Below, piece by piece: positions 3,177-64,000 of a stretch of 64,000 bases of DNA. The stretch is taken from the IMG/VR virus record IMGVR_UViG_3300027899_000001, positions 1 through 64,000 of that record; one strand, given 5' to 3'. How positions within the stretch are numbered: the stretch's first letter is position 1; every line of letters starts with the position of its first letter. The notes under the pieces were generated by a model. That model saw nothing but the letters and a program-made list of their open reading frames with translations. It was not told the origin of the DNA and ran no database searches. Made by a program: the position numbers and the translations under genes.

Positions 3177-3178
3177 TT

Positions 3179-4363: not shown

Positions 4364-4375
4364 ATATATGATATA

Positions 4376-22500: not shown

Positions 22501-25500
22501 TGCAATTACTAGTGCATCTTGTGGTGGTAATGTATCTCATGATGGAAGTACAGCAGTTACAGCTAAAGGTATTTGTTGGAATACTTTTTCAAATCCTACA
22601 ATATACGATTCTTCTACAACAAATGATGGAATAGGAGAAGGAATATTTTATAGCGCGCTAACTAACTTAAATCCAAGTACTCATTATTATGTTAGAGCTT
22701 ATGCAACAAATGAAATGGGAACAGCATATGGAAACGAAGTAACTCTTGATACAAGTAAAAATTCATATTATGTAAATATTGTTAATGGAAATGACTTAAA
22801 TAGTGGAACTACAGAAAATACTGCGTGGAAAACTATAACAAGAGTTAACACAGCATTAACAACTCTTCCTGCTGGTTATGCTATACGTTTTAGAAAAGGA
22901 GATACATGGTATGGAACAATAAATATTGGAAAATCCGGAGCTGCTAATTTTCCAATTACTATAGGTTCTTATGGAACTGGCGCTAATCCAGTAATAACTG
23001 GATTTACTACAGCATCCTCATGGACAAATGCAGGAAATGGTATATATTATACGTCTTTAACTGCGGAATCTTCAACGTTAATGGTATCATTAGATGGTTA
23101 TCAAGCACAAATGGGTAAATGGCCTGCAATAGGTTGGAATCATATAGAAAGTACAAATGGAACAAGTACAATAACTGACACAGCTATAACAAGTACTTAT
23201 AACTGGATAGGTGCACAAGTAGTTATAAGAAAAAATCGTTGGGTTATTGATAAATGTATAATAACTAATCAAAGTGGAAATACAATAACATACAATGATC
23301 CAGATGCGGGATCTTATCAAGCAGTAGCAGGATGGGGATATTTTATACAAGCAGATTTAAGTACATTAGTATCTTATGGAAATTGGTATCATGATCATAG
23401 TGCAAATAGATTTTATATGTATTTTGGCGCTGAACTTCCCGCAAATCATGTTGTAAAAATAAGTTCTTTAGATAGATGTATTTATAATAGTAATTATGAT
23501 CATATAACAATTGATGGTCTTACGCTTGAAGGTGCTAACATAGATGGCTACTATGGATATAATAGTGCATCAAATCATATTATTCAAAATTGTAATATTG
23601 GTTTTTCTGGTCGTCATGGAATATATTTACAATATCCATCAAATTGTATTGTACAAAATTGTAGTATTTATAGTTCAAATGATCATGCCGTTTATTCAAC
23701 TTCTCAAGTTGGTGTAAGTGGACCGTTTACTATTAGTAGAAATACTATCACAAATACTTTTATATTTCCTGGAACTACAGATAGCGGTGATAATCATGGA
23801 AATGCATTATATTCTTGTGCAGATAATACATTAATTCAAAATAATAGAATTCTTAATACAGGACATCTTCCAATTAATTGGGGAGGAACTAATTCAATAA
23901 TAAGAAATAATATTATAGATACATTTTGTTTTACAACTGATAATGGTGCGGGTATTTATACTTATGGTGATAGAAATACTGGAAAACAAGTTATTGGTAA
24001 TATAGTATTAAATGCTATTAGTGCTACAGACGGTACCGATATAAATGATCCTTTATATCCTAATACTCATTTTTCTCATGGCTTATATACTGATGGATTT
24101 AGTGCACATGTTTCATTTATAGGAAATACTGTTGGCAATGTAAATGCATTTGGTATTCGTATGAGTGCTAGTACTAATATTGTACTTAAAGATAATACAT
24201 TTTATCAATCTTATGGATTTGTTTCAGTTTTAAGATCTGATACTCTTATAAGAGATATAAGTGTGTATAATAATGTATTTATATCTAATAATTTAGATGA
24301 ACATTCTCCAGAAGGTATTAAATATGAATCTTATTTTACTCCTATTTCTAGTTCAACTGCAACATCTGAAATTCAAGGATGGGGCTATTGGAATAATAAT
24401 TATTATTATACAAATACTGAAACTGCAATGGTAGTATATGGTACAGATACTGGTCAATGTGCTCCAAAAAGTTTAGAAAAATGGAAAACAAAATATAATC
24501 ATGACACAACTTCTGTATTTTATCCTAAGTTTTCAAGCTATACAATAAATTCATCAGGAACGAACATGTTATCTAATTCTAGATTTGATTCAGATATTAA
24601 TAACTGGACAGGAACATCATTAGCTTCAATATCTTGGGTATCTAATTCTAGTCTTGATGGTGGTGCATTGAAACTTAGAACAAATAAAAAAGATTATAAT
24701 TGGAATTGGTGGGATTCTGATGATTATTTCTATTCATCAATTGGCGCAGTGGAAAGTAATAAAACATATATAATTAAGCTTTTAGGAAAATCTGAATTAG
24801 CAAATAAAACTATTTCTGTTCGTATGTATCAAACAAGTACGGGAAATTCTATTCAACAATTTTTTACTTTACCAAGCACAAGTGTCAATAAAGAGATATT
24901 ATTCAAATATCCTCAAACAGATCCTGCTGCTTCATTACGTTTTGCTGGTGGAGACGGTGATGCATCAGTATATTTTGATAATATTTATTGCTATGAAGCA
25001 AGTGTAAATCTTATAGACGTTGCTGCTACTAATTTTCATTTTATTTATAATACATCAGAAAATATAAATAAGACATATAGTTTAAGCGCTCCAATGAATG
25101 ACATAAAAGGTAATTATTATGCTGCTGGAATGTTAGATTTATCTACATGGAATTCATTAGTTCTTTTTGGAACAGGTACTGTTACTGAAGGAAGCACTGC
25201 AATTACATATGTTCCTACTGTTACTACATCTCCAGTTACAAATATATTTTTAACTAGTGCTTCTACTGGAGGTAATGTAACTAATGGTGGCGGATTAACT
25301 GTTACATCAAGAGGCGTATGTTGGAATACATCTATAAATCCAACTATATTAAATTCTTCAACAAATAATGGAACAGGAACCGGAGTATTTACAAGTGCAT
25401 TAAGTAACTTAAATCCAAGTACTCATTATTATGTTAGAGCTTATGCTGAAAATTCACAAGGTATAGGATATGGTTCTAATGTTCAATTTGATACGTCACC

Positions 25501-28922: not shown

Positions 28923-29013
28923 GAATATATAAAATATAGTAGTTAGATTAATGCTAGAACATTAATCAACACTTGGATAGATTGAAATGCTGTCCTACTA
29001 TAATCTATATATT
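28923..29013 (+). ncRNA. Structured leader/inverted-repeat element A upstream of an HNH gene
   Basis: AATATATA..TATAGTAG pairs with CTACTATA..TATATATT; internal hairpin GATTAATG/CATTAATC; homologous to 55127-55213 with compensatory changes. Confidence 0.55.
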
Positions 29014-29034
29014 TTAAAATAACGGATAGAAATC

Positions 29035-29772
29035 ATGAATCATCAAAAAGTCTATGATGCTATAATTCAGAAAGCAAAATCTGAAAATAGAATTAAATTA
29101 CAAAAAAATCAAGAAGGTTATGTTTATTATGAAAATCATCATATATTACCAAAATGTTTAGGCGGAAGTAATGATGAAGAAAATTTAGTTTTATTAATCG
29201 CAAAAGAACATTTTGTTTGCCACAAATTACTTACATATATCTACAAAGAAAATATATCATTAATATATGCGTTTTTTATGTTATCTCATTTTGAAAAATA
29301 TAAAATATACATTTCATCAAGAGATTATGAAAATATAAGAAATTTAATTGCAATTACCCCTATAACTGATGAAAAAAGAATAAATTTAAAATTAGGTGTT
29401 AAAAAAAGAAAACCTATTTCAGAAAATACTCGTAAAAAGATGAGTGATTTAAAAAAAGGAAAAATACCTTGGAATAAAGGAAAAAAACATTCTGAAGAAT
29501 CAAAGAAAAAAATGAGTGAATCACAATTGAAACGTGAAAGTTTTTCGCAAAAAACACGGGAAAAAATGAGCGAATCACACAAAGGAAAACCCATAGGTAA
29601 AGGACGACAATTATCAAAAAAACATAAAGAAAATATAAGTAAATATAGAAAAGGAAAGATTGCAAATAATAAAGGAAAAATTGCTATATATAAAGATAAT
29701 AAAAAATATTTTATAAATGAAAATAGATTAGAAGAATATATACAAAAAGGCTATATTACAAAACAACGTTAA
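29035..29772 (+). CDS. Free-standing HNH homing endonuclease with NUMOD3-type repeats
   Basis: YYENHHILPKCLGGSNDEENLVLL.AKEHFVCH; KGKKHSEESKKKMSES repeats. Confidence 0.85.
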   Translation: MNHQKVYDAIIQKAKSENRIKLQKNQEGYVYYENHHILPKCLGGSNDEENLVLLIAKEHFVCHKLLTYIYKENISLIYAFFMLSHFEKYKIYISSRDYENIRNLIAITPITDEKRINLKLGVKKRKPISENTRKKMSDLKKGKIPWNKGKKHSEESKKKMSESQLKRESFSQKTREKMSESHKGKPIGKGRQLSKKHKENISKYRKGKIANNKGKIAIYKDNKKYFINENRLEEYIQKGYITKQR

Positions 29773-54017: not shown

Positions 54018-54374
54018 TTATTTTTTTATTTTAATTGTATCTAATTGTGCTCCACGAATATTAACAGTAGTATTAGATTTAAGTTTTTCAGCAACTGATT
54101 GAACTGCTGTTGCTTTTTCATTAGTTAATTTAGCAAATTGATTAGAAAGTTCTAACTCTTTTTGTAATTCACTGATTGTTTTAGACGTCTCTTTTTCCAA
54201 TATACTGTATTTATTTGTCAAAGAATCTATTGTATACGTATATTGTTTTCTTTCTAATGATAAAGTTACATTACGATTACAACTTTGCATTTTTGTAAGC
54301 GCTAATAAAATTAAGAGTGCAAGAGCAATCCATTTCATATTTTTTTCAAAAAATTGTTGAGGAGTCTGTGCCAT
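54018..54374 (-). CDS. Membrane-anchored coiled-coil protein (i-spanin-like architecture)
   Basis: N-terminal TM segment WIALALLILLAL followed by a coiled coil. Confidence 0.5.
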   Translation of the reverse strand: MAQTPQQFFEKNMKWIALALLILLALTKMQSCNRNVTLSLERKQYTYTIDSLTNKYSILEKETSKTISELQKELELSNQFAKLTNEKATAVQSVAEKLKSNTTVNIRGAQLDTIKIKK

Positions 54375-54468
54375 AATAAATGTTTTTTGTTATTATATAT
54401 TCTTCCTGAATATTATATAAAAACAAAAGGCCTAAGTTTTAGACCTTTTTATTTTTACATGAAAATAT

Positions 54469-55074
54469 TTATTCTTTTTTTGTTACATCTATTTCAACAG
54501 TATTTCCTTCTACTTGTGGAACTTCTTCTTTAGTGGGCTCAAGATCTGAAAGATAAAATCCCTGTTCAGCTGCTGCCCATCGTTCTTGAAGATATTGAAG
54601 ATTTTTTAATTCTACCCTAGCTTCTTCTACTTTAGTTCCAACCACTATTCCAATTTTAGAAAATTTATCAGCTTGTGCTTCAAATTCTTTTGCTTGTTTA
54701 AGTCCATATCCTCCGGGATTTGATAACATATATGCACAATATTCAAGCGCCTGATAGCCTAATCTAAATCCAGTAGTGTCATCAGCAAGTGCAATTGCTT
54801 TATCTATTTCTATTTCTAATTTAAGCATACCCATCCATTCCATTTTTGACCAGAATGCATATTTATTCATAAAATCTTTAAGATATAATCCTACATCATT
54901 GGCACCAAATTTTCCTATTTCACTAAGCTCCCATTTTTTTTCATCAAATTCTTTTAATGCAGCAGTAAATTCTTCTTTGTATTGCTGAACTTCTTCGGGA
55001 GTCGGTTTATTTAATTCTTGTTTAGGTTCTTCTTCTTTAACTACTGTTAACGGTGTATTTTTTTCTCTTGCCAT
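54469..55074 (-). CDS. Hypothetical acidic helical protein
   Basis: 201-aa ORF with a downstream hairpin at about 54425-54450. Confidence 0.7.
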   Translation of the reverse strand: MAREKNTPLTVVKEEEPKQELNKPTPEEVQQYKEEFTAALKEFDEKKWELSEIGKFGANDVGLYLKDFMNKYAFWSKMEWMGMLKLEIEIDKAIALADDTTGFRLGYQALEYCAYMLSNPGGYGLKQAKEFEAQADKFSKIGIVVGTKVEEARVELKNLQYLQERWAAAEQGFYLSDLEPTKEEVPQVEGNTVEIDVTKKE

Positions 55075-55126
55075 TTTTTATAAATTTATTTTTATTTTAT
55101 ATAATGTTTTGTTAAAAAGTTTTAAT

Positions 55127-55213
55127 GAATATATAATAAAAGCAGTAATCTTTACCTGACAAATAAAGAAACCGAAGAGGGATCAACGGCTGTCCTGCTT
55201 AAATTATATATTC
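55127..55213 (+). ncRNA. Structured leader/inverted-repeat element B upstream of an HNH gene
   Basis: GAATATATAAT..AAGCAG pairs with CTGCTT..ATTATATATTC; internal hairpins TCTTTA/TAAAGA and CCG/CGG; homologous to 28923-29013. Confidence 0.55.
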
Positions 55214-55233
55214 TTAAAATAATAGAGGGAATC

Positions 55234-55998
55234 ATGAATCATCAAAAAACTTATGACTATATAATTCAAAAAGCAAAATCTGAAAATAGAATTAAATTAA
55301 GAAAAAATCAAGAAGGTTATGTTTATTATGAAAATCATCATATTTTGCCTAAATGCTTAGGCGGAAATAATAATGAAGAAAATTTAGTTTTATTAACTGC
55401 AAAAGAACATTTTGTTTGTCATAAAGTATTAACATACATTTATAAAGAAAATAGAAAAATAGCCTGTGCTTTTCATAAAATGTCATTTGGAATACATAAT
55501 ATAGCATATAAAATATCTTCAAGAGATTATGCATATGCAAGAGAATTAATATCTATAACTCCAATTTCTAATGAAACTAGAGAAAAATTAAGTAAAGCTA
55601 CAAAAGGAAAACCTAGTAAAAAACGAGGCACTCATCTTTCAGATGAAACTAAAAGAAAATTAAGTGAAAAGGGAAAGGGAAGAAAGGTATCTCTTCAAAC
55701 TAGACAAAATATCAGTAACGGACAAAAAGGAAAAAAATTATCACAAGAACATAAAGAAAAATTACGTAAAACTAAATTAAGTAAACCTGGACATAAACAT
55801 ACTGAAAAATTTAAAAACAAAATATCAGAAAATAACAAAAAATATAAAACAGGAATTAAAGTTTCTACCCAAACTAGAATTAAAATGTCAATTACACGAA
55901 AGGGAGTTAAAAAAACAGAAGAGCACAAACGAAAAATACTTGAAGGACGTAAAAAATATTTTGAAAAAAGAAGACAAGAAAAATTATTACACGATTAA
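55234..55998 (+). CDS. HNH homing endonuclease with NUMOD3 repeats, inserted against the local gene orientation
   Basis: N-terminus nearly identical to 29035-29772; repeated LS.ET(K/R).K(L/I)S motifs. Confidence 0.88.
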   Translation: MNHQKTYDYIIQKAKSENRIKLRKNQEGYVYYENHHILPKCLGGNNNEENLVLLTAKEHFVCHKVLTYIYKENRKIACAFHKMSFGIHNIAYKISSRDYAYARELISITPISNETREKLSKATKGKPSKKRGTHLSDETKRKLSEKGKGRKVSLQTRQNISNGQKGKKLSQEHKEKLRKTKLSKPGHKHTEKFKNKISENNKKYKTGIKVSTQTRIKMSITRKGVKKTEEHKRKILEGRKKYFEKRRQEKLLHD

Positions 55999-56760
55999 AT
56001 ATTCTTGTGAATGTTTAATATGATATTCTTTGACTAATTCAATAAATTTTTGTTCATATGTTTCAAGTTCTACACCAGATAATATTATTTCTTGTAAAAT
56101 ATCAGATTGCTTATCAACACAAAGTATAGATGCTTTGTTTATTATTAAACCTTTTTCTTTATACATTTCTCGTAAACAATTTGCATATCCTCCTAACTGA
56201 TAGAAATATTTAATTTCTTTTGTGCTTCCTTTTTTAATTTTTCCATTAGAAGATTTAAAATCAGTAAGAGCTAAACCAAATATTTTATCTTTATAAAGAA
56301 TATCTAATTTTCCTCGATAAAATAAAGAAGGTGAATAAATTCCTAATTCTATTGCTAACATATCATTATACTGATTGGAGTAATCTGAATAATAGAATTT
56401 ATAGAATAAATTTCTCCCTTCTTCTATTTTATCGTTTGGAATATTATCTTCTTTTAATATTTTAGGACTTTCTTCTTGAGTATATTTTAATGCTTCGGAA
56501 ACATCTTTTGATAAAGAATATTTGGATATAAAGTTTTCTACAAATGTGTGCATAGATGAGCCTCTGTTACCTGCCGCGGTCATTATTTTATCTACTGCAG
56601 CTTGACCCATAGTTTCTACCCATTTATCATATTCTGGATCAGGAATCATCTCACCAAGAATTGTTGATACCGATGGAATTTTAATTTTATAGACTGCCTC
56701 CGGCAATCCATAAGATCCCTTTATCCATTTTACATTGTTTAAGTCAAATTCGAAACCCAC
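55987..56760 (-). CDS. PD-(D/E)XK exonuclease (RecB/Cas4-like superfamily)
   Basis: IPSVSTIL, RGSSMH, YRGKLDIL, LTDFKSS and YQLGGY motifs. Confidence 0.8.
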   Translation of the reverse strand: MGFEFDLNNVKWIKGSYGLPEAVYKIKIPSVSTILGEMIPDPEYDKWVETMGQAAVDKIMTAAGNRGSSMHTFVENFISKYSLSKDVSEALKYTQEESPKILKEDNIPNDKIEEGRNLFYKFYYSDYSNQYNDMLAIELGIYSPSLFYRGKLDILYKDKIFGLALTDFKSSNGKIKKGSTKEIKYFYQLGGYANCLREMYKEKGLIINKASILCVDKQSDILQEIILSGVELETYEQKFIELVKEYHIKHSQEYLIV

Positions 56761-57224
56761 GTTATTAAAAGGGGTATTAGTTTAAATTTAAGAACTACAA
56801 ATACTATTAATCCGTTAATAATAATAAATTTTAATAACCAAGATAAAGAAAGTTTATTAAAAATAAATCGATATACTATAAAATATGATAACGTTGGATT
56901 TCCTTTATCATCTTCAAATTGATTAAATTCACAACTTAAACATTCAGCAAATCCAAGTTCTTCATCTAAATAACGATTAAGGAGGTTTAAAGATTCTAAC
57001 ACCTTTGTACGTTTAATTACATCTGGCAAAACAGAATCAGAATCATCTAAAGTAATCGTAACAAAAATATCATATAATTTTGTACGTTCTAATTTCCATT
57101 TATTATATTTAGAATTAGGATTTGATTCTTCTTTTCGAATTATTCTTTTCCAGTCAGAAAAATTTTCAAAATCTCTATAGACTTTAACAATTCCCCAATT
57201 TCTTGGTTTTAAAAAATCTAACAT
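56739..57224 (-). CDS. Hypothetical protein with C-terminal hydrophobic segment
   Basis: 161-aa ORF within the operon. Confidence 0.65.
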   Translation of the reverse strand: MLDFLKPRNWGIVKVYRDFENFSDWKRIIRKEESNPNSKYNKWKLERTKLYDIFVTITLDDSDSVLPDVIKRTKVLESLNLLNRYLDEELGFAECLSCEFNQFEDDKGNPTLSYFIVYRFIFNKLSLSWLLKFIIINGLIVFVVLKFKLIPLLITWVSNLT

Positions 57225-57225
57225 G

Positions 57226-57426
57226 TTATTTTTTAATTTTTAATTTTCTTTTAATAAAAAAATCTACTCTTGCTTCAATTTCTTTTCTGAGAGCTGGTTT
57301 TTTAAATTTAAGTCCATATGTTTCTACATGGCCTTTTATATCACATCCATCATAACCTTCTTCCATCATTAATTGAGTTGCAAGAATTTTAAATTCTTTA
57401 GATTTAAGAACGTCTTCTTTTTTCAT
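57226..57426 (-). CDS. Small basic hypothetical protein (start moved to MKKEDV)
   Basis: The ATG at 57426 directly follows the sigma factor stop. Confidence 0.55.
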   Translation of the reverse strand: MKKEDVLKSKEFKILATQLMMEEGYDGCDIKGHVETYGLKFKKPALRKEIEARVDFFIKRKLKIKK

Positions 57427-57427
57427 G

Positions 57428-58060
57428 TTATTCTTCATTTTCATTTCCAAAATACGAATCCACTAAATCTGGATATTTTTTATAAAGACCATCAGCCACA
57501 TCTTTACGAGCTTTACGAAGTCTTGTTTTAACAGTTGAAAGATTCCAACCTAAATCATCTGCTATATCATTCAATTGTTTTTGATTAATTTCTCTTTCAA
57601 TCATTACAGTTTTATATGGTTCTTCTAATTGATTTATTGCAGAAATTGATGCATCAAATAATTGTTGTGTTAATTCTTCTCCGCTTGGACCCATACATTC
57701 AGTATTCATATTAAATACTGGATTATAATTTTGAAGTAATTTAGAATGATTACTCATATATCTATCATAAGATAGATTTCTACTGCCATTTCTTATAATA
57801 CCGAGCGCTTCATTTTTTGCAATTGCATATACCCATGTAGAGAAATTATATTGAATTTTATATTGTTCAATTTTTTCCCAAATAGCTATAAAAGTTTGTG
57901 CTACTACTTCTTTAGCTAAATCTCTATCTCTAACGTATTTGTATGCGAATGATGAAAGGCCTGGTTTTAAACGATTAATTAAGATTTCAAAATTTTTGTT
58001 ATTTTTTTCTTCTATAAAATTTAATGCAATAGTTTGGATACTAGGATTTTTCTTACTCAT
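57428..58060 (-). CDS. Sigma-70 family (ECF-like) RNA polymerase sigma factor
   Basis: Region 2: LAKEVVAQTFIAIWEKIEQY...FSTWVYAIAKNEAL. Region 4: LNDIADDLGWNLSTVKTRLRKAR. Confidence 0.88.
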   Translation of the reverse strand: MSKKNPSIQTIALNFIEEKNNKNFEILINRLKPGLSSFAYKYVRDRDLAKEVVAQTFIAIWEKIEQYKIQYNFSTWVYAIAKNEALGIIRNGSRNLSYDRYMSNHSKLLQNYNPVFNMNTECMGPSGEELTQQLFDASISAINQLEEPYKTVMIEREINQKQLNDIADDLGWNLSTVKTRLRKARKDVADGLYKKYPDLVDSYFGNENEE

Positions 58061-58112
58061 ACAATAATTTTAATTTAGTTTATGTGTTTATGTATTATGT
58101 TATCATAGAAAA

Positions 58113-58415
58113 TTAATCTTCTATAATTTGTTCTACGAAATTATTGATATTTTTCATCATAGCTTCTACTCTTACAAATGGAAATTGTCCAATAGCATTA
58201 ACAATTTGAGTTAAAGTTTGATGATCCATTTTTTCAACATCAATTGCTTGAATAAGTCCAGCGATTTCATTAAAAGGACGATCTCCTACTGCTTGTAAAA
58301 GAGCCTTTTTAAAATCGGGTTTAATTCTATATGTTGGAACATAAGCATTTGTTTCAACTTTTTGAGTTGCATCTACAGTAGGAGTAGCTGATACGGTTGG
58401 TTTTTCATTTGCCAT
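58113..58415 (-). CDS. Hypothetical protein
   Basis: 100-aa ORF with an internal duplication (RPFNEI / QFPFVRV). Confidence 0.65.
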   Translation of the reverse strand: MANEKPTVSATPTVDATQKVETNAYVPTYRIKPDFKKALLQAVGDRPFNEIAGLIQAIDVEKMDHQTLTQIVNAIGQFPFVRVEAMMKNINNFVEQIIED

Positions 58416-58542
58416 AATAATCTTTATTTTAGTTTTAAGTTTATATTTATTTTATTTTTATATATAAAAAATGTTAAAAAGTTTTGATTTGATATAATAC
58501 AATATAATACAAATGTGTGTTAATGATTTTTAATTTTGTTAA

Positions 58543-58821
58543 TTATTTGTTATTTTTAACTATATAGCCACTATTTTTTATATGTGATAGCCAATCTTCA
58601 ACATCTTTTTTAATTATCATACTAGAATCAGTAACTTCTCCAGATTTTGTTTTATAATACTTCACATGAACAAACCATTCATCATATTTATCTTCTATAA
58701 ATAATACTGATAAAGAAGAGTGCGGTTTACTTAACAGATATAACTGTTTATTATTTGAAAAATCTTTTATGTTTTCTGTAAGTTTTGTTTTTACTTTTGG
58801 TATAAGTTTTTTATAAGCCAT
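58543..58821 (-). CDS. Hypothetical protein
   Basis: 92-aa ORF within the operon. Confidence 0.6.
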   Translation of the reverse strand: MAYKKLIPKVKTKLTENIKDFSNNKQLYLLSKPHSSLSVLFIEDKYDEWFVHVKYYKTKSGEVTDSSMIIKKDVEDWLSHIKNSGYIVKNNK

Positions 58822-58822
58822 A

Positions 58823-59530
58823 TTATCGTATTAATAAAGTTTTATCTAATAAATATTTATATTCATCAAAAAGTTCAGTTGGTGTATACGTTTTTAAGTT
58901 TTCAATATTAGATTCTTCAGCTGATATACGTCGAGCACAATCAACAACTTCAAAATTATCATATGTTTTCAATGCAAGATAATTATCTCTAACTCTACTT
59001 TGAAATTCTATATCTGCTTCATGAATATCTTTTAAATGAGATTCATTTTCACTTCTATGCTGTAATCTTTCTTTGATAATATCAATAGGAACATCAAAAA
59101 AGATATTTAAATCTGGATATGGTAATTCTAAAAATCCAAATTCAAATTCATCAATCCATTCTCTTATTATACTAGATTGTATACTAGTATTATATTTAGC
59201 TCCTTGAAAAGCCATATTACAAAATACATATCTATCTAATAAAAGAACATCATTTTCTGCTAATTGTTTATTAAGAGTGGGAAGATATAAAAATCTATCC
59301 ATTGCATACATGTTTGCTATAAATACAGGATCTACTTTCTTTACATCACCATATTCTCCTCTTAAATAAGATGATATAACAATACTCGCTTCATTATCTC
59401 CATATTTTGGAAAATGAACATATTCAAATTTAAGATTTTTATCTGTGAGATATTGTTTTATTAATTCTACTTGTGTACTCTTGCCTGAAGCATCAAGACC
59501 TGATACGGCGATAAGTGTTGCGTTATACAT
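58823..59530 (-). CDS. tmk: Thymidylate kinase
   Basis: GLDASGKSTQ P-loop, HFPKY, LLDRYVFCN and PYPDLNIFFDV motifs. Confidence 0.92.
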   Translation of the reverse strand: MYNATLIAVSGLDASGKSTQVELIKQYLTDKNLKFEYVHFPKYGDNEASIVISSYLRGEYGDVKKVDPVFIANMYAMDRFLYLPTLNKQLAENDVLLLDRYVFCNMAFQGAKYNTSIQSSIIREWIDEFEFGFLELPYPDLNIFFDVPIDIIKERLQHRSENESHLKDIHEADIEFQSRVRDNYLALKTYDNFEVVDCARRISAEESNIENLKTYTPTELFDEYKYLLDKTLLIR

Positions 59531-59547
59531 AAAAAAAGTATTAAAGA

Positions 59548-59832
59548 TTATGGTTTATAAAAAATGTTTTCTATATATTGAAAAATAAAAACAACGGAAA
59601 GGCCTATGCACAATAGGCCCCAAATGTTCCAATCCGTTTTAAATATAAGTTTTAATGTGTATCCAAAAATAAAAGATTTAAATGGTATAATAAATAATAG
59701 GATAAATGAAGTAAAAAGATCTGCTAATGTATTAGTAAACTGTGTTTTAGTAGACTCAGTTTCTATAGATTTTTCACCTTTATTTTTAAATTCATTTAAT
59801 TTATTACTTAATGAATTATTACTCAGCGTCAT
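59548..59832 (-). CDS. Small membrane protein
   Basis: Two hydrophobic segments in the C-terminal half. Confidence 0.6.
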   Translation of the reverse strand: MTLSNNSLSNKLNEFKNKGEKSIETESTKTQFTNTLADLFTSFILLFIIPFKSFIFGYTLKLIFKTDWNIWGLLCIGLSVVFIFQYIENIFYKP

Positions 59833-60464
59833 TATTTTTTTGTTTTAAGATCTAATTTTTTTACTTTTGTATCGCCAGGAGCAGCTTTCTTTTCTTCTTT
59901 TTCTTCTTTTTCTTCAGATTCACCTGCTTCGTGTTCTTCTTTAGCTTCTTTTTCTTTAGATTCACCAGCTTCATGTTTTTCATGAGCTTTATCTTCTGGA
60001 GCTTTTCCTTTATCTTTTATATCACCGGGTTTGCCATCAGTTTTCGCTGCAGGACCTTTTTCACCTTCTCCTTTTGAAAAATTGGGAGATTCTTTCTTAG
60101 GATCGAGATTTCCTTTTTTCTCTGGTTCTTTTTCACCAGGAGCTCCATCTTCTTTTTCTCCAGGTTTTCCGCCAGCAGTTTTAACTTCACCAAACATTCC
60201 GGGTTTAAAGTCTTTAACTGAGTCAAGATCTGTTTGAAGATCGTATCCAGGTTCAAATTTAGAACCGCCCATATTCATTTCTACTTTAACTTCGACTTTT
60301 CCCTTTTGAAATTCTTTTTTAAGCCAATCATAAGATTTCTTATTTGTATCTGGAATAACTATTCCATCAGCATCAGTTAAGCCTTCGCCACCACTCATCA
60401 TTTGAGTAGATTCTTCGTAAAGTTTTTCTAAATAGTCGTTGATGTTAAAATTACCTGCTTTCAT
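59832..60464 (-). CDS. Highly charged E/K-rich protein, possibly prohead core/internal
   Basis: LEKLYEE N-terminal motif, low-complexity EK tail and its own promoter motif. Confidence 0.6.
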   Translation of the reverse strand: MKAGNFNINDYLEKLYEESTQMMSGGEGLTDADGIVIPDTNKKSYDWLKKEFQKGKVEVKVEMNMGGSKFEPGYDLQTDLDSVKDFKPGMFGEVKTAGGKPGEKEDGAPGEKEPEKKGNLDPKKESPNFSKGEGEKGPAAKTDGKPGDIKDKGKAPEDKAHEKHEAGESKEKEAKEEHEAGESEEKEEKEEKKAAPGDTKVKKLDLKTKK

Positions 60465-60496
60465 ATAATTAGTTTTATTTTATATATCTTATATAT

Positions 60497-60913
60497 TTAT
60501 CGTCCAAAAAGATTTTCTCCTGGTTTTGGCATTCTTTTTAATACCCACTTCTTTGTAATTGGATTTTTTACACAATATTTTGGTAATAAACCTGCTTGTC
60601 TATATGTTCCATAGAGTTGATCAGTCCAATAGCCTCTTTGTTGTCTTTGTTCTCCAATTTGACGTTGATATCCGTTGCTCCAATCGTATTTTGGTTCTTT
60701 TTTATAAAAGTCAGCTTTTGAATGTCCATTTAAAGTTACAAAAATATATTTCTGTATATCTGTAAAGCTTGCGCCTTCTTCTCTGTATTTTGCAATAAAC
60801 TGTAATAGTTTAAACGCTTTTGTTTTAACCATTTTTTCTCCATATCCTATATTCATATCTCTTATAGGATCTGATTCTTCTGAGAACTTTTCAAATACTC
60901 TTCTAGCCTTCAT
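60497..60913 (-). CDS. Hypothetical protein with shared leader and wHTH-like domain
   Basis: MKARRVFEKFSEESDPIRDMNIG; domain shared with the C-terminus of 61404-62234. Confidence 0.75.
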   Translation of the reverse strand: MKARRVFEKFSEESDPIRDMNIGYGEKMVKTKAFKLLQFIAKYREEGASFTDIQKYIFVTLNGHSKADFYKKEPKYDWSNGYQRQIGEQRQQRGYWTDQLYGTYRQAGLLPKYCVKNPITKKWVLKRMPKPGENLFGR

Positions 60914-60991
60914 TTAATAAATCCTGCATTTTTTTAGTTGTATATAAATAACTTTCGTATTTTTTTATAGATCTATCAAAACTCGATGCTG

Positions 60992-61396
60992 TTATTTTTT
61001 TATTTTAAAAATTTCTTTTATAACGCCTTTCATATCATATATATTTTTAATATAATAATATTTTCCTTCTGTGTTATAAATCCACCCCCATCTAGCGCCT
61101 TTTAATATAGCATTTCCCGCTTTATTATTCATAGCAAAATCTAATTGATTTGTTTCACTGTAAAGTAATTTAGCAGCTGGATGACTTCCATTTTCACAAA
61201 CAATAGTCATAACATCGTCTGTATTTATATCATAATAATGACCTACTTCATCATAATAAATATCCTTAAATTTAAAATATTCAGAAAAATCTTCAATAAA
61301 TTTTTCTAATATCTGTATGGGCTTTATTCCTATACCCATATCTCTTATAGGATCTGATTCTTCTGAAAACACTTCGTATATGTATTTAGATTTCAT
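60992..61396 (-). CDS. Hypothetical protein with shared leader
   Basis: MKSKYIYEVFSEESDPIRDMGIG N-terminus. Confidence 0.75.
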   Translation of the reverse strand: MKSKYIYEVFSEESDPIRDMGIGIKPIQILEKFIEDFSEYFKFKDIYYDEVGHYYDINTDDVMTIVCENGSHPAAKLLYSETNQLDFAMNNKAGNAILKGARWGWIYNTEGKYYYIKNIYDMKGVIKEIFKIKK

Positions 61397-61403
61397 TCAT
61401 TCT

Positions 61404-62234
61404 TTAATATTTTATTCCATCATCAAAATAAGGTCTATATTGATCTAAATAATTTTGTCCACTAGTATCAAGAATATAATTACCCGCTGAGTTTTTTCTT
61501 GTTTTGCCATTAATTAATCCATATGCAAATGCGCCAGAATAATATCCTCTATTAAGATTTTTATCAAATTTTCCCCTTCCGCTAGACATTTCATATGCAA
61601 ATTTTATTATATCTGTGTATCTTCTGCCTTCAAGCCCAGCTTCTTCAATAAATTCTAATATTTTCCAGATTTTATATCCTCTTGAAAAGGTTTTATCTCC
61701 CCATGATTTTTTTCCTGTAAGATGTGTTTTTCTTTGTTCTATAGGGCCCAACTCTTTATATCTTTTTCTACTTTCTTTTTTCTGTTCATAATCCCAATCA
61801 TGTATAGTTACTTTACCACCAACTTTGCAAATATTTCTTAATTTTTCTTCTGATGGTCTTATACCATTTTTAATAAAAACTAAATCACCCGTTACTTCTT
61901 TAGGAAAACCATGTAGAGATTTGAAGTTTTTTGAATTTGTAATAGAAAAATCTCCATTTATTTTATTAAATTCAATGAATTCAGGAAAATTATCAAATAG
62001 AAAAAATTGTATAGAACAATTATCAACATTTAATGTTCCATCTAAATTTATTGTTACATAATTCATTACGTCGAAATCATCAAAACCACTACGATCATTG
62101 GGTTTAAAATATTTATGTAAACCTGAGTTAATTTGATTTAGCCATTTTTTAATTTTTTGAGCTAAACCAATTCCCATATCCCATACAGGATCTGAATTTT
62201 CTACAAATTTTTCAAATACATATTGAGCTTTCAT
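61404..62234 (-). CDS. Shared-leader protein with LRR-like and wHTH-like domains
   Basis: MKAQYVFEKFVENSDPVWDMGIG; middle similar to 49210-49860, end similar to 60497-60913. Confidence 0.75.
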   Translation of the reverse strand: MKAQYVFEKFVENSDPVWDMGIGLAQKIKKWLNQINSGLHKYFKPNDRSGFDDFDVMNYVTINLDGTLNVDNCSIQFFLFDNFPEFIEFNKINGDFSITNSKNFKSLHGFPKEVTGDLVFIKNGIRPSEEKLRNICKVGGKVTIHDWDYEQKKESRKRYKELGPIEQRKTHLTGKKSWGDKTFSRGYKIWKILEFIEEAGLEGRRYTDIIKFAYEMSSGRGKFDKNLNRGYYSGAFAYGLINGKTRKNSAGNYILDTSGQNYLDQYRPYFDDGIKY

Positions 62235-62284
62235 AGAATGAATTACTTTTATTTATATATTCTTTATGTCTAAATTGAATTGAC

Positions 62285-62310
62285 AAAAAACCCCCACTGA
62301 GGCTGGGGGT
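62285..62310 (-). terminator. Terminator of the tmRNA transcript
   Basis: Minus strand ACCCCCA-GCCTCAG-TGGGGGT followed by TTTTT. Confidence 0.85.
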
Positions 62311-62434
62311 AAATCTCCTACCAACGAGTGCTTCTTAAGCAGCCATTTGTAATGCGTAACTATTTTCGCCGTTTACTTGCGTGTTGAGACATTCATTATT
62401 TCCCTTAGTATACAATCTAAACCAAATCATCCCC
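62311..62434 (-). ncRNA. ssrA: tmRNA coding piece (5' acceptor strand, P2 strand and tag ORF GENSYALQMAA*) of a permuted ssrA
   Basis: Starts GGGGATG-ATTTGGTTTAGA-TTGTATAC; tag ORF 62370-62335 follows GCAAGTAAAC; stop codon lies in hairpin TGCTT-AAG-AAGCA. Confidence 0.88.
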
Positions 62435-62466
62435 ATTAAAAGCAATATCTCTTTTATAAAGATTTG

Positions 62467-62545
62467 TGGAGATGGTGGGATCCGACCCCACGTCTTGCAT
62501 ACCTACTCTATAACTAGCTCTTGCGAGCATTCTCAATATCTTAAA
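62467..62545 (-). ncRNA. ssrA: tmRNA acceptor piece (P2 strand, GAC, T arm, 3' acceptor strand), upstream of the coding piece; 5' boundary approximate
   Basis: GTATGCAA-GAC-GTGGG-GTCGGAT-CCCAC-CATCTCC-A; forms a 7-bp acceptor stem with G3:U70 and an 8-bp P2 with the coding piece. Confidence 0.88.
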
Positions 62546-62548
62546 GAA

Positions 62549-62556
62549 CAAATATA
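62549..62556 (-). promoter_or_regulatory. Bacteroidota-type -7 promoter box TAnnTTTG (TATATTTG)
   Basis: Exact match to the consensus immediately upstream of the tmRNA acceptor piece; the -33 box is not clear. Confidence 0.55.
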
Positions 62557-62600
62557 ATACAAAATCTTACAATTTGTATCATATCTTTGTTAATTATTTG

Positions 62601-62951
62601 TTAAACTTTAGCTTTTGTTGCTCTTTTTCTTGGAGCTGTAACAGGTTTAACAGTTTCAACTGGTTGTGTTGGAGGTGCTGGAGGTGCTGGAGGATTAACT
62701 ACTTGAGGATCTTCAGTAGGCGTATTAAATAATTTATTAAGACCAAAAAATCTCCAAAGTACATAATAAATAACAAATATTGCTAACCAAATTCCTAATA
62801 CTCCATGAAGTAATCCTTTAGTAGCTACAAATGCAAAAAATAATATTAATATATTAACATATTGTACCCAATATTTTTTAAATTCCGGCAATGCTGTATT
62901 TATTGCCCATCCTTTTAATACTTCCCATAATTTTGTTAAAAAGTTTTTCAT
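62601..62951 (-). CDS. Two-TM membrane protein with Pro/Lys-rich tail (holin-like architecture possible)
   Basis: Two hydrophobic helices and a basic C-terminus. Confidence 0.55.
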   Translation of the reverse strand: MKNFLTKLWEVLKGWAINTALPEFKKYWVQYVNILILFFAFVATKGLLHGVLGIWLAIFVIYYVLWRFFGLNKLFNTPTEDPQVVNPPAPPAPPTQPVETVKPVTAPRKRATKAKV

Positions 62952-62973
62952 AGTTTTAAGTTTATTTTAAAGA

Positions 62974-63069
62974 TTATTTTTCTGATACTTTATCCCATAT
63001 AATAACTGCTAATAGGATAACTATTATACCCCCTAAGATAATAATAGTTTTTAAAAATGTTGTGTCCAT
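62974..63069 (-). CDS. 31-aa single-TM peptide
   Basis: Translated manually: MDTTFLKTIIILGGIIVILLAVIIWDKVSEK; fills the gap between the portal and the next gene. Confidence 0.5.
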   Translation of the reverse strand: MDTTFLKTIIILGGIIVILLAVIIWDKVSEK

Positions 63070-63086
63070 GCTATTAAATTTTAATT

Positions 63087-64000
63087 TTAAATTCCTAATG
63101 TTGTTCCACCGGCTTCAGGTGCTGTTTCTGTTCCTCCTGTTTCAGTGCCAGGTTCAGTAGGAGCGCCAAGGCCAAGATCTTCTCCCCCGCCACCCATACC
63201 TAAACCGCCGCCAAGATCCATTCCTCCGCCCATTCCACCAGTTGAAGTTCCAGGAACTCCTCCTTCTTCGCCTTGAGCTGCATTAATACGTTTAACATTT
63301 TGAGCAATACGAGTAAGTTGTTCTCTTCTTTCTTTCTTATATCTTTCATTTAATTTCATATCTTCTTCAGTAAAATCCATATATTTTTCAACTAAAAATT
63401 TTGGATCAAAATACATTCCATCTACTGTTATATTTCCTTCAGCATCAACTTCTTGTTGTTTAATATTCATTAATTCACCAACTATACCAGATCCTTGTCT
63501 AGCTATGTCTCTTTTCTTAGCCTCAGTAAATAAGTTTTCTTCAATGAATTCAAGACCAATAGCACCTTTTAATGCTTTATCTTTTGCAAACTCTGGATGT
63601 TTTAAACAAAATTGAATCCAAGTAGGTTTTAATAATATATCTTGAAGTATAGAACGAATACGATTAATAAAATAATTAAATCTTATTTCTTCTCTTGCAA
63701 TGCTTTCTCCGCCAGTTGTCCAATTAGAACCGCCAGATGCACCTTCTTCTCCACTACTTGAAAATCTATCTTTTGGAATTTTTGTTTCAATAATAAATCT
63801 TTTCCAAAAATAATCAAGAGCCATTGTTCCTGTTAAATCAAATCCCTGAGGAGCAAAAGAATCCACTTCAACTTGTCCACCACCTTCTTTTGATGGAAAG
63901 ATATATTGTTTTGCAAATGAAAAATTTGGAGTTCCATTAATTGTTACTTCACCACTGTGATAATCTATTGTAACATCTTCTTTATACATTGCACGTAATT
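63087..64000 (-). CDS. Portal protein (T4 gp20-like), C-terminal part; runs off the window
   Basis: QYIFPSKEGGGQVEV..., DYFWKRF...KIP.DR and REEIRFNYFINRIR align with gp20 motifs; the frame is open to the window edge. Confidence 0.85.
   Translation of the reverse strand, partial: LRAMYKEDVTIDYHSGEVTINGTPNFSFAKQYIFPSKEGGGQVEVDSFAPQGFDLTGTMALDYFWKRFIIETKIPKDRFSSSGEEGASGGSNWTTGGESIAREEIRFNYFINRIRSILQDILLKPTWIQFCLKHPEFAKDKALKGAIGLEFIEENLFTEAKKRDIARQGSGIVGELMNIKQQEVDAEGNITVDGMYFDPKFLVEKYMDFTEEDMKLNERYKKERREQLTRIAQNVKRINAAQGEEGGVPGTSTGGMGGGMDLGGGLGMGGGGEDLGLGAPTEPGTETGGTETAPEAGGTTLGI

What the first reader, a model, noticed from the sequence alone, without database searches (positions are those of the whole stretch)
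62285..62556. Circularly permuted, two-piece tmRNA gene in a phage
Seen on the minus strand, in transcription order: a promoter box; an acceptor piece ending GTATGCAA-GAC-GTGGG-GTCGGAT-CCCAC-CATCTCC-A (62467); a 32-nt spacer; a coding piece starting GGGGATG (62434); the tag ORF; a terminator. GGGGATG/CATCTCC gives a 7-bp acceptor stem with the G3:U70 alanine determinant and A73, and TTGTATAC/GTATGCAA gives an 8-bp P2. The tRNA 3' end therefore precedes the 5' end. CCA is not encoded. Known: two-piece tmRNAs are described from Alphaproteobacteria (and some mitochondria), some Cyanobacteria and some Betaproteobacteria; the Bacteroidota and phage ssrA genes I know are one-piece. Inference: a possible independent permutation event in a Bacteroidota phage lineage, processed by host RNase P and 3' maturation enzymes. 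I cannot confirm novelty without a search.
Basis: partly seen in the sequence, partly recalled or inferred. Interest (0 to 1): 0.92.

Follow-up and report, generated by a model that had tools for sequence, protein, structure and literature searches.

The report
Two-piece tmRNA gene in a megaphage
A giant phage related to the Lak megaphages carries a real, conserved "back-to-front" (two-piece) gene for tmRNA, the ribosome-rescue RNA. Such genes are already on record in other phages of Bacteroidota, so this is a divergent new member of a little-studied group, not a first.

Summary
ARAGORN calls a permuted tmRNA at 62244-62556(-) with tag GENSYALQMAA. Rfam's tmRNA_permuted model scores 64.5 bits against a threshold of 47.

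The gene is not an assembly artefact. Two assemblies carry it identically. A related megaphage contig (L356) carries a 78%-identical copy at the same syntenic place, with compensatory changes in the stems, an in-frame indel in the tag and an unconserved spacer.

The host phage is a Lak-like megaphage (contig 405 kb). Its structural proteins match almost only phages of Bacteroidota.

The novelty claim fails. Two-piece tmRNA genes in phages were surveyed in 2022, including Cellulophaga phage phi4:1 and 13 crAss-like phages. RefSeq annotates them in crAss-like genomes, and Chryseobacterium phage MA9V-3 has one.

What remains interesting:
- The gene reaches no threshold of the alpha, beta or cyano models.
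- It belongs to a "short-form" set of phage genes with only 57-64 nt before the resume codon.
- Some of that set carry a Bacteroidota signature.

Whether this set arose by an independent permutation is unresolved; the trees are unstable and the AU test gives p = 0.44. I rate it a new variant of a known kind, of moderate interest.

The parts
62548..62564 (-). AT-rich block upstream of the RNA; candidate promoter. It contains TATATTTG, which resembles the Bacteroidota -7 element.
   Evidence: 10 of 17 positions are conserved in L356, against 31% further upstream. It is unique in the window. It has no statistical support as a promoter.
62531..62536 (-). Leader strand UUGAGA of the acceptor piece. 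Proposed to pair with UCUCAA at 62384-62389 as a distal P2 helix that helps hold the two pieces together.
   Evidence: The fold pairs these two segments. The same helix is 9 bp in L356 (5 of 1000 shuffles reach it). Positionally equivalent helices with other sequences occur in the crAss-like, GEQVE, L100 and MA9V-3 genes. In this gene alone it is not significant (106 of 1000).
62517..62528 (-). Leader hairpin GCUC-GCAA-GAGC with a GNRA loop.
   Evidence: L356 has a longer hairpin of different sequence at the same place, so the structure is kept while the sequence is not.
62495..62502 (-). P2a strand of the acceptor piece, GUAUGCAA.
   Evidence: It pairs with 62408-62415. 7 of 8 pairs change on both sides across 16 genes.
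62475..62491 (-). T arm: stem GUGGG/CCCAC with loop GUCGGAU.
   Evidence: Two stem pairs are compensated in L356. The loop is unusual, with G at positions 54 and 58. All 15 relatives in A3 and L356 have UUCGA or UGCGA in the loop.
62467..62474 (-). 3' strand of the acceptor stem, CAUCUCC, plus discriminator A (62467). No CCA is encoded.
   Evidence: It is 100% identical in L356.
62435..62466 (-). Intervening spacer of 32 nt with a small hairpin. Predicted to be removed during maturation.
   Evidence: It is only 41% identical to L356, with 13 gap columns, and L356's spacer is 19 nt.
62408..62434 (-). Start of the coding piece: acceptor 5' strand GGGGAUG (G3 pairs with U70), D-loop analogue AUUUGGUUUAGA, and P2a strand UUGUAUAC.
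   Evidence: It is 93% identical in L356.
62371..62407 (-). Short region before the tag, too short for a full pseudoknot 1. It contains UCUCAA (62384-62389).
   Evidence: The distance from G1 to the resume codon is 64 nt, against 93-99 nt in 98 Bacteroidota one-piece tmRNAs. It is 84% identical in L356.
62335..62370 (-). Tag reading frame: GGC resume codon to UAA, encoding GENSYALQMAA.
   Evidence: L356 encodes GDTVYNEMKMAA and differs in length by an in-frame 3-nt indel.
62318..62352 (-). Hairpin analogous to helix 5, with the stop codon at its apical loop.
   Evidence: Folds of this gene and of L356 give the same arrangement, with a compensated inner stem.
62285..62310 (-). Intrinsic terminator: a 7-bp G+C-rich stem followed by a U run.
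   Evidence: L356 has a terminator of different sequence at the same place.

Best explanation
This is a working two-piece tmRNA (ssrA) gene of a Lak-like megaphage whose host is probably in Bacteroidota.

Shown:
- The gene order is acceptor piece, spacer, coding piece.
- The tRNA-like domain has all the alanine identity elements.
- The gene is conserved at a syntenic site in a diverged relative, in a pattern that fits selection on a structured RNA and on a translated tag.

Inferred from what is established for Caulobacter and other two-piece tmRNAs:
- One precursor of about 260 nt is transcribed from just upstream of 62545 to the terminator at 62285.
- Host RNase P cuts 5' of G62434.
- The 3' end of the acceptor piece is trimmed to A62467, and the host CCA-adding enzyme adds CCA.
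- The two RNAs stay paired through the 7-bp acceptor stem, the 8-bp P2a and probably distal helices.
- Host AlaRS charges the RNA through G3:U70 and A73.
- With host SmpB and EF-Tu it enters stalled ribosomes, and translation resumes at GGC. This adds Ala-GENSYALQMAA, a tag close to the host-type GENNYALAA, so host proteases should degrade the product.

For the phage, this would keep ribosomes free while host and phage mRNAs are being cut during infection.

On origin, the gene was inherited within this megaphage lineage. It belongs to a loose set of short-form phage-borne permuted tmRNAs that fit none of the three described lineages. The ultimate origin of that set is open.
For: Identity:
- ARAGORN calls a permuted tmRNA.
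- RF04321 scores 64.5 bits against a threshold of 47.
- The unconstrained fold recovers the helices of the tRNA-like domain.
- The helices covary across 16 genes, with 0 of 500 shuffles reaching the observed score.

Not an artefact:
- Two IMG/VR assemblies are 100% identical over 13.5 kb.
- L356 has the same gene order.

Selection:
- L356 is syntenic with window 54078-64000, and its proteins are about 55-73% identical.
- The two RNAs align at 78% mean column identity. The acceptor 3' strand is 100% identical, the 5' tRNA-like part plus P2a 93% and the pre-tag region 84%. The spacer is 41% and the upstream region 31%.
- The T stem, leader hairpin, helix 5 and terminator carry compensatory changes.
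- The tag has an in-frame indel.

Phage and host:
- Terminase, sheath, portal and fibre genes are present.
- The sheath is 40-45% and the terminase 35% identical to the Prevotella Lak phages.
- Of 25 portal hits with a named host, 23 are phages of Bacteroidota.
- In a sample of species genomes, the tag-prefix codons matched almost only Bacteroidota records. All 101 tmRNAs called in those loci are one-piece.

No SmpB was found among 10 small or neighbouring ORFs, which fits dependence on the host protein.
Against: - No expression, processing or charging data exist.
- The T loop reads GUCGGAU. Positions 54 and 58, which normally form the U54-A58 pair, are both G. Every relative examined, including L356, has the usual loop. 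This copy could therefore be weakened.
- Pseudoknot 1 appears to be missing or replaced. In E. coli it is important, though it can be replaced by a hairpin (from my knowledge of the literature, not tested here).
- The promoter is not established.
- The leader-to-coding helix is not significant in this gene alone.
- The host phylum is inferred, not shown.
- Only 64 kb of a 405-kb genome was examined for smpB.
Confidence: 0.8

Rival explanations
1. The gene, or the phage-borne set it belongs to, arose by a separate circular permutation of a Bacteroidota-type or phage one-piece tmRNA. That would be a fourth origin beside the alpha, beta and cyano lineages.
For: - The gene fails all three lineage models. 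Beta scores 44.1 bits against 84, and the others are lower. Its sister L356 scores best on a different model, cyano at 51.3 against 70, so the labels carry no meaning here.
- The tag GENSYAL... matches the Bacteroidota tag GENNYALAA.
- The GEQVE, crAss-like, L100 and L052/L224 phage genes carry UUUGAC in the D-loop analogue. 95 of 98 Bacteroidota one-piece tmRNAs have it; most other viral permuted genes have UUCGAC.
- A tree that includes the tag groups GEQVE, crAss-like, L100, L187 and MA9V-3 with the Bacteroidota one-piece genes (SH-aLRT 93).
- The AU test does not reject adding this gene to that group (p = 0.44).
- Lak-B4, a relative of this phage, has a one-piece tmRNA about 200 nt upstream of its portal gene. 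Its acceptor stem is the same and its tag ends in MAA.
Against: - This gene has UUUAGAU, not UUUGAC.
- Its first P2 pair is U:A, as in the beta-type genes, not C:G.
- Outside the tag codons it resembles phage permuted genes more than Bacteroidota one-piece genes. Coding-piece scores are 33-40 for GEQVE and 29-31 for ANANTYA, against 19 on average (26 at most) for Bacteroidota, and much of the Bacteroidota score comes from the tag.
- In both trees it falls outside the Bacteroidota cluster, nearest to L204, which passes the beta threshold.
- Deep nodes have bootstrap support of 14-49.
- Beyond the tRNA-like domain, the Lak-B4 tmRNA is no more similar to this gene than shuffled sequence. It also lies on the other side of the portal gene.
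- The sister tag GDTVYNEMKMAA is not Bacteroidota-like in its middle part, so GENSYAL may be convergent.
Confidence: 0.28
2. The gene descends from one of the three known permuted lineages, most likely beta-like. It spread among phages by horizontal transfer, was shortened, and its tag was reshaped to suit a Bacteroidota host.
For: - The best lineage model is beta.
- The nearest sequences by identity and by tree path are L204, which passes the beta threshold at 93.7 bits, and the ANANTYAIAA group.
- It shares the U:A first P2 pair and the AAGACG junction with beta-type genes.
- The GEGNFALAA viral genes pass the alpha threshold clearly yet have a GE- tag. This shows that tags can drift within a lineage.
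- Melnitz is a published case of a phage carrying a tmRNA of a lineage foreign to its host.
Against: - 44.1 bits is far below the beta threshold of 84, and most beta-specific helices are marked as unpaired in the alignment.
- The sister gene's best model is cyano.
- A no-tag tree groups it with crAss-like genes as well (97/87).
- Similarity to the GEQVE group in the pre-tag region is at least as strong.
Confidence: 0.35
3. The copy in this phage is decaying, or acts as a decoy that soaks up SmpB, rather than as a tagging tmRNA.
For: - Both partners of the T-loop 54-58 pair are changed in this copy only.
- There is no pseudoknot 1 of normal size.
- Genes holding only the tRNA-like domain exist in phages. 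DS6A is reported to inhibit host tmRNA (PMC4131195), and similar mini-genes turned up.
Against: - The tag frame is intact, with a resume codon and a stop codon in the loop of the helix-5 analogue.
- The promoter-side block and the terminator are kept.
- The core is 84-100% identical to L356.
- The change hits both 54 and 58 at once, which looks like a paired change rather than decay (inference).
Confidence: 0.1
4. An assembly misjoin, or an attachment-site fragment of a host one-piece ssrA.
For: Phages often integrate into ssrA and carry its 3' part (general knowledge; PMC4383910 is listed).
Against: - Two assemblies are identical.
- The diverged syntenic relative has the same order.
- Both halves are present, with their own terminator.
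- 122 distinct viral genes with the same order were collected.
- A blastn search found no similarity in the deposited phage collection, and similarity to the sampled Bacteroidota one-piece tmRNAs is weak outside the tag.
Confidence: 0.01

Closest known systems
L356: permuted tmRNA of an uncultured related megaphage (IMGVR_UViG_3300010338_001826, 5161-5462 minus strand)
   Same: Same gene order, the same syntenic site beside the portal-side gene block, and 78% mean column identity. It shares the leader, P2, the D-loop analogue UGGUUUAGAUUG and the pre-tag region. Its tag also starts G[DE] and ends MAA.
   Different: It has the canonical T loop, a 19-nt spacer, a 12-residue tag GDTVYNEMKMAA ending in UAG, and a longer leader hairpin. 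Its best lineage model is cyano rather than beta.
Short-form permuted tmRNAs of phages with known or likely Bacteroidota hosts: crAss-like phages (RefSeq cr53_1, cr60_1, cr115_1 and others), Chryseobacterium phage MA9V-3, and the marine GEQVE[LMY]AMAA group
   Same: They are permuted and have only 57-64 nt between G1 and the resume codon. They have a leader helix plus a hairpin ahead of P2 and tags that start with G. They reach only RF04321, at about 55-73 bits, and no lineage threshold.
   Different: Identity to this gene is at most about 65-68% over 160-220 nt. They have UUUGAC and a C:G first P2 pair. The GEQVE and crAss-like genes keep a pseudoknot-like element after the tag, which this gene lacks.
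Beta-type two-piece tmRNA (Rfam RF01850) and the phage gene L204 (tag ANANTYALAA)
   Same: It is the best-scoring lineage model. It shares the U:A first P2 pair, the AAGACG junction and AAGUAAAC before the resume codon.
   Different: The score is 44.1 bits against a threshold of 84. The distal beta helices are not formed. The tag starts with G rather than A, and the 5' region is shorter (64 nt against 78 in L204).
Alpha-type two-piece tmRNA (Caulobacter; Rfam RF01849) and phage examples such as Melnitz and pelagiphages
   Same: The principle is the same: an acceptor piece precedes a coding piece, the precursor is processed into two base-paired RNAs, and phages carry it (PMC9004378).
   Different: The score is below beta's 44.1 bits and so below the alpha threshold of 50. 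There is no ANDN-type tag, and no glutamine riboswitch hit in the Rfam scan.
One-piece tmRNA of Bacteroidota (tag GENNYALAA) and of Prevotella phage Lak-B4
   Same: The tag prefix GEN-YAL matches the Bacteroidota genes. The acceptor stem GGGGAUG/CAUCUCC, the MAA tag end and the nearness to the portal gene match Lak-B4.
   Different: Those genes are colinear, about 395-410 nt long, with a 93-99 nt 5' region (measured in the Bacteroidota genes) and pseudoknots. They show no specific sequence similarity outside the tRNA-like domain and the tag.

Membership tests
tmRNA (functional class) | A tRNA-like domain with a 7-bp acceptor stem, G3:U70 and discriminator A73 | tested here: met
   GGGGAUG pairs with CAUCUCC and is followed by A62467. 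G3:U70 is present in 16 of 16 relatives and the stem is 100% paired.
tmRNA (functional class) | A T arm with a canonical T loop (U54 U55 C56 R57 A58) | tested here: inconclusive
   The stem is present and covaries. The loop is GUCGGAU, with G at 54 and 58, while L356 and the 15 relatives in A3 have the usual loop.
tmRNA (functional class) | A short tag reading frame without a start codon, ending in hydrophobic residues and a stop codon in or near helix 5 | tested here: met
   The tag GENSYALQMAA is followed by UAA at the apical loop of a hairpin. The frame is conserved in L356 with an in-frame indel.
tmRNA (functional class) | Pseudoknot 1 between P2 and the tag | tested here: not met
   Only 64 nt separate G1 from the resume codon, against 93-99 nt in Bacteroidota one-piece genes. 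No pseudoknot was identified. The same holds for 25 short-form viral genes.
tmRNA (functional class) | Alanylation, SmpB binding and trans-translation | not testable with these tools
   No experimental data are available.
Permuted (two-piece) tmRNA, Rfam RF04321 | The acceptor 3' half lies upstream of the 5' half, and the score reaches the gathering threshold | tested here: met
   64.5 bits against 47, covering the full model 1-213. ARAGORN also flags the gene as permuted.
Permuted (two-piece) tmRNA, Rfam RF04321 | The precursor is processed into two RNAs, with CCA added | not testable with these tools
   This is inferred from the unconserved spacer (41% identity, differing length) and the missing CCA.
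beta_tmRNA RF01850 | Gathering score of 84 bits, with the distal P2 helices and 3' hairpin of the family | tested here: not met
   44.1 bits. Several helices are marked as not paired.
alpha_tmRNA RF01849 | Gathering score of 50 bits | tested here: not met
   No alpha match is listed. Four overlapping same-clan matches scoring below beta's 44.1 bits were dropped, so any alpha match is below 50.
cyano_tmRNA RF01851 | Gathering score of 70 bits | tested here: not met
   No cyano match is listed; any dropped same-clan match scores below 44.1 bits. The sister gene L356 reaches 51.3.
Standard one-piece tmRNA RF00023 | Colinear 5' half, pseudoknots and 3' half, with a gathering score of 47 bits | tested here: not met
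   There is no hit at gathering, and any dropped same-clan match scores below 44.1 bits. ARAGORN makes no standard call.
Short-form phage-borne permuted tmRNAs (informal set defined here) | 57-64 nt from G1 to the resume codon, a leader helix plus hairpin ahead of P2a, only RF04321 reached, and carried by phages | tested here: met
   The distance is 64 nt. UUGAGA/UCUCAA and the GNRA hairpin are present. The Rfam behaviour matches. The set itself is not shown to be one clade.

The most novel reading that the evidence does not exclude
This gene would belong to a fourth, independent origin of tmRNA gene permutation. The other members would be L356 and the short-form genes of crAss-like phages, Flavobacteriia phages and Chryseobacterium phage MA9V-3. 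The origin would lie in Bacteroidota-type or phage one-piece tmRNAs, and the lineage would be maintained only in phages. It would have a reduced architecture in which pseudoknot 1 is replaced by a helix formed between the two pieces.
Probability: 0.28. Interest if true: 0.7.

Novelty: new variant of a known kind. Interest (0 to 1): 0.42.

Why it matters
Two-piece tmRNA is a textbook case of RNA gene permutation, and it is said to have arisen three times. The public tools and the 2025 tmRNA database sort every permuted gene into alpha, beta or cyano.

This gene and the phage genes around it fit none of the three. Some of them carry a signature of Bacteroidota tmRNA. A proper phylogeny could therefore add a fourth, phage-borne origin. 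It might also explain the few dozen 'alpha/beta/cyano' permuted calls listed for Bacteroidota assemblies in that database.

The gene also adds to the evidence that very large phages, and crAss-like phages, bring their own ribosome-rescue RNA. Its minimal form, about 80 plus 145 nt without a normal pseudoknot 1, is a compact natural test case for what trans-translation needs.

For this window alone, the finding is a well-supported annotation rather than a surprise.

Tried and rejected
- blastn of the gene against 50,697 deposited phage genomes found no match. L356's copy gave only hits to the tRNA-like domain; the best was a crAss-like Bohxovirus at 78% over 72 nt.
- The metagenome scan with the unusual T arm returned only the source contig and three unrelated sequences.
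- Of the 14 viral hits to the D-loop-analogue pattern, only L356 and the two source-phage contigs (L001, L002) carry this tmRNA. The rest were coding sequence or mini-genes holding only the tRNA-like domain.
- The Bacteroidota promoter motif TTTG...TAnnTTTG occurs 4 times against 4.3 expected, so it gives no host evidence. The upstream 17-mer is not a repeated phage promoter.
- I looked for SmpB among 10 ORFs and found none. The rest of the window and of the 405-kb genome was not scanned.
- I tested whether Lak-B4's one-piece tmRNA is the direct ancestor. The acceptor-piece score was 22, like any other tmRNA. The coding-piece score was 17, within the range of shuffled sequences (maximum 18). 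Direct ancestry is therefore not supported.
- Trees with and without the tag codons gave conflicting, weakly supported placements, and the AU test was uninformative. I do not claim a clade.
- The leader-to-coding helix is significant on its own only in L356 and L100, so I present it as probable, not shown, for this gene.
I cite it only from Table S1 of PMC9004378.
Full report
**1. The observation**

- The acceptor piece ends with the P2 strand GTATGCAA, then GAC, a T arm (GTGGG / GTCGGAT / CCCAC), CATCTCC and the discriminator A at 62467.
- A 32-nt spacer follows (62466-62435).
- The coding piece starts GGGGATG at 62434.
- The tag frame runs from GGC at 62370 to TAA at 62335.
- A G+C-rich hairpin with a T run closes the gene at 62310-62285.
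- CCA is not encoded.

ARAGORN reports one RNA gene in the 64-kb window: a permuted tmRNA at 62244-62556(-) with tag GENSYALQMAA. Rfam 15 gives one match at gathering level, RF04321 tmRNA_permuted, at 64.5 bits against 47 with E = 3.7e-10. An unconstrained fold of the 261-nt precursor recovers the acceptor stem, the T arm and the 8-bp P2.

**2. The gene is real and under selection**

The exact T-arm and acceptor string occurs in two IMG/VR contigs from different metagenomes, L001 (35 kb) and L002 (405 kb). L001 is 100% identical to the window over 13.5 kb. The 405-kb contig also appears in the metagenome collection (L365).

A scan with the unusual D-loop analogue found a true relative, L356, on a 44-kb viral contig.
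- L356 is syntenic with window 54078-64000, with proteins about 55-73% identical.
- Its permuted tmRNA sits at the corresponding place.
- The two RNAs align at 78% mean column identity, and the pattern is that of a selected structured RNA:

| Segment | Identity to L356 |
|---|---|
| Acceptor 3' strand | 100% |
| 5' tRNA-like part plus P2a | 93% |
| Pre-tag region | 84% |
| Tag | 62%, with a 3-nt in-frame indel |
| Spacer | 41%, different length |
| Upstream DNA | 31% |

The T stem changes at two pairs on both sides. The leader hairpin, the hairpin that holds the stop codon and the terminator all keep their structure with different sequences.

Across 16 related phage genes:
- the acceptor stem is paired in every cell;
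- G3:U70 is invariant;
- the T arm is 98.8% paired;
- 7 of 8 P2a pairs show changes on both sides;
- no shuffle out of 500 reaches the observed covariation, and slid controls fall to about 50% pairing.

**3.

The acceptor piece has a conserved leader. It starts with UUGAGA (62536-62531), followed by a GNRA hairpin (62528-62517). A conserved single-stranded stretch then leads into P2a.

UUGAGA is complementary to UCUCAA (62389-62384), 13 nt upstream of the resume codon, and the fold pairs them. In L356 this helix is 9 bp (5 of 1000 shuffles reach it) and in L100 at least 10 bp (3 of 1000). Helices of other sequence occupy the same position in other groups:
- crAss-like: UUGACU/GGUCAA;
- GEQVE: UGACC/GGUCA, with UGAUC/GAUCA in L113;
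- MA9V-3: UUCGUC/GACGAA.

In this gene alone the helix is not significant (106 of 1000), so I call it probable. It would be a distal P2 helix that ties the two pieces together.

The distance from G1 to the resume codon is 64 nt. It is 93-99 nt in 98 Bacteroidota one-piece tmRNAs. Among the viral permuted genes the distribution is bimodal, at 57-64 or 75-110 nt. A pseudoknot 1 of normal size cannot fit.

One oddity is the T loop, GUCGGAU, with G at both 54 and 58. L356 and all 15 relatives in A3 have the usual loop. Both partners of the 54-58 pair changed together, which may be compensatory or may weaken this copy.

**4. The genome around it**

The window is phage DNA. It encodes a large terminase, a tail sheath, collagen-like fibres, an endolysin, a sigma-like factor, a portal fragment and a 5523-codon ORF.
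- The sheath is 40-45% and the terminase about 35% identical to the Prevotella Lak megaphages. These are the best hits among 50,697 phage records.
- Of 25 portal hits with a named host, 23 are phages of Bacteroidota: Prevotella, Tenacibaculum, Chryseobacterium and Flavobacterium.
All 101 tmRNAs called in those loci are one-piece, and 96 have the tag GENNYALAA.

A Bacteroidota host is therefore likely but inferred. No SmpB was found among ten small or neighbouring ORFs.

**5. Comparison with what is known**

- Buchholz et al. 2022 (PMC9004378) described the two-piece ssrA of phage Melnitz. They counted 53 distinct two-piece calls among 18,146 phage genomes.
- Their Table S1 lists 'Permuted' for Cellulophaga phage phi4:1 and 13 crAss-like phages. 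The main text does not discuss these entries.
- The GNTSY-tagged genes I collected are those of RefSeq crAss-like genomes, where they are annotated as SsrA.
- Chryseobacterium phage MA9V-3 (PV245944.1) has an annotated tmRNA that ARAGORN calls permuted. It behaves in Rfam like this gene: RF04321 at 64.7 bits and beta at 40.7.

The 2025 tmRNA database paper (PMC11915505) recognises three permuted clades and built RF04321 from them. Its phylum table lists 18 alpha, 23 beta and 7 cyano permuted calls among 29,415 Bacteroidota assemblies. I found no paper that treats Bacteroidota-phage permuted tmRNAs as a group.

**6. Lineage**

Most viral permuted genes pass the alpha or beta threshold. This gene does not. 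Beta is its best model at 44.1 bits against 84, and alpha, cyano and standard are lower. L356's best model is cyano, at 51.3 against 70. The label is therefore arbitrary.

The same behaviour is seen in several other groups:
- the marine GEQVE[LMY]AMAA group, whose neighbouring gene is closest to Flavobacterium phage immuto;
- the crAss-like group;
- the ANANTYAIAA group;
- L100, L187 and MA9V-3.

The closest sequences to this gene, apart from L356, are L160 (68.6% over 159 nt) and L209 (65% over 222 nt).

Segment scores show that the coding piece resembles the GEQVE genes (33-40) and the ANANTYA genes (29-31). It resembles Bacteroidota one-piece genes less (mean 19, maximum 26), and much of that score comes from the tag.

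Some evidence points to a Bacteroidota origin for part of this set:
- UUUGAC in the D-loop analogue occurs in 95 of 98 Bacteroidota one-piece genes. Among viral permuted genes it is found only in the GEQVE, crAss-like, L100 and L052/L224 genes.
- A tree that includes the tag groups these (apart from L052/L224), together with L187 and MA9V-3, with the Bacteroidota genes (SH-aLRT 93).

This gene, however, has UUUAGAU and a U:A first P2 pair, as beta-type genes do. It falls outside that cluster, nearest L204, which passes the beta threshold. Without the tag codons it joins the ANANTYA, crAss-like and L187 genes (97/87), and all deeper nodes are unresolved. The AU test does not reject placing it with the Bacteroidota cluster (p = 0.44).

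The related Lak-B4 phage has a one-piece tmRNA (RF00023 at 47.3 bits against 47) about 200 nt upstream of its portal gene. It has the same acceptor stem and a tag that I read as ending in MAA. It lies on the other side of the portal gene and shows no specific similarity beyond the tRNA-like domain.

An independent permutation is therefore possible but not supported for this gene.

**7. Mechanism**

Shown: the gene order, the identity elements and the conservation.

Inferred from established two-piece tmRNA biology (Keiler et al. 2000, cited):
- one precursor is made;
- RNase P cuts before G62434;
- the acceptor piece is trimmed to A62467 and receives CCA from the host enzyme;
- the pieces stay paired through the acceptor stem, P2a and the distal helix;
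- AlaRS charges the RNA;
- host SmpB and EF-Tu deliver it to stalled ribosomes;
- the tag AGENSYALQMAA marks products for host proteases.

The phage would gain ribosome recycling during infection.

**8. Verdict**

This is a real, conserved two-piece tmRNA gene in a Lak-like megaphage. It is a new and divergent member, with L356, of a poorly described short-form class of phage-borne permuted tmRNAs that the three lineage models do not capture. It is not the first permuted tmRNA in a phage, nor the first in a phage of Bacteroidota. Interest is moderate. It would rise if a proper phylogeny showed a fourth origin.

Noticed in passing
window 10592-27163 (+): A single ORF of 5523 codons in the structural region of the phage. 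It was not analysed.
   Followed up: no
window 28989-29254 and about 55189-55453: A 267-nt stretch is repeated at 87% identity in two genes (ORFs 29035-29772 and 55234-55998), so these look like paralogues.
   Followed up: no
window 1959-5590 (+): Three tandem ORFs of about 400 codons each. The first two match collagen-like tail-fibre families; the third (4376-5590) was not scanned.
   Followed up: no
L353 about 4002-4100, also L355, L358 and L360: A gene of about 80 nt made only of a tmRNA-like tRNA domain. It starts GGGGGTG and ends CGCCTCCA, has the tmRNA D-loop analogue and no tag. It sits next to tRNA-like sequence in several viral contigs and resembles the DS6A mini-tmRNA.
   Followed up: no
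NC_055896.1 (cr113_1) 6517-7370 and NC_055890.1 (cr56_1) 6721-7561: In these two crAss-like genomes the match to the permuted tmRNA is split into two pieces about 850 bp apart, with an annotated endonuclease between them. This may be an intron or a homing-endonuclease insertion in a phage tmRNA gene.
   Followed up: no
L366 (Lak-B4) 18483-18892 and 16555-16627: Lak-B4 has a one-piece tmRNA that only just reaches the Rfam threshold and that ARAGORN misses. It lies just upstream of the portal gene. A tRNA with anticodon CTA lies 2 kb away, which fits the TAG recoding reported for Lak phages (the recoding is from my knowledge of the literature).
   Followed up: partly
L183 1756-1935 and L141 2188-2360, 3789-3924, 5546-5672: In crAss-like contigs the permuted tmRNA lies close to RAGATH-9 RNA and Hatchet ribozyme copies. 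In L183 the RAGATH-9 match abuts the tmRNA gene.
   Followed up: no
PMC11915505, Supplementary Table S2: The tmRNA database lists 48 permuted calls (18 alpha, 23 beta, 7 cyano) in Bacteroidota assemblies. These might be phage-borne genes like this one, forced into the nearest lineage label. This is speculation.
   Followed up: no
L005 8240-8274: A DUF805b RNA motif scores above its Rfam threshold 1.5 kb from the GEQVE-type tmRNA. A weak sub-threshold hit of the same motif overlaps the leader of the window's tmRNA at 62500-62522.
   Followed up: no
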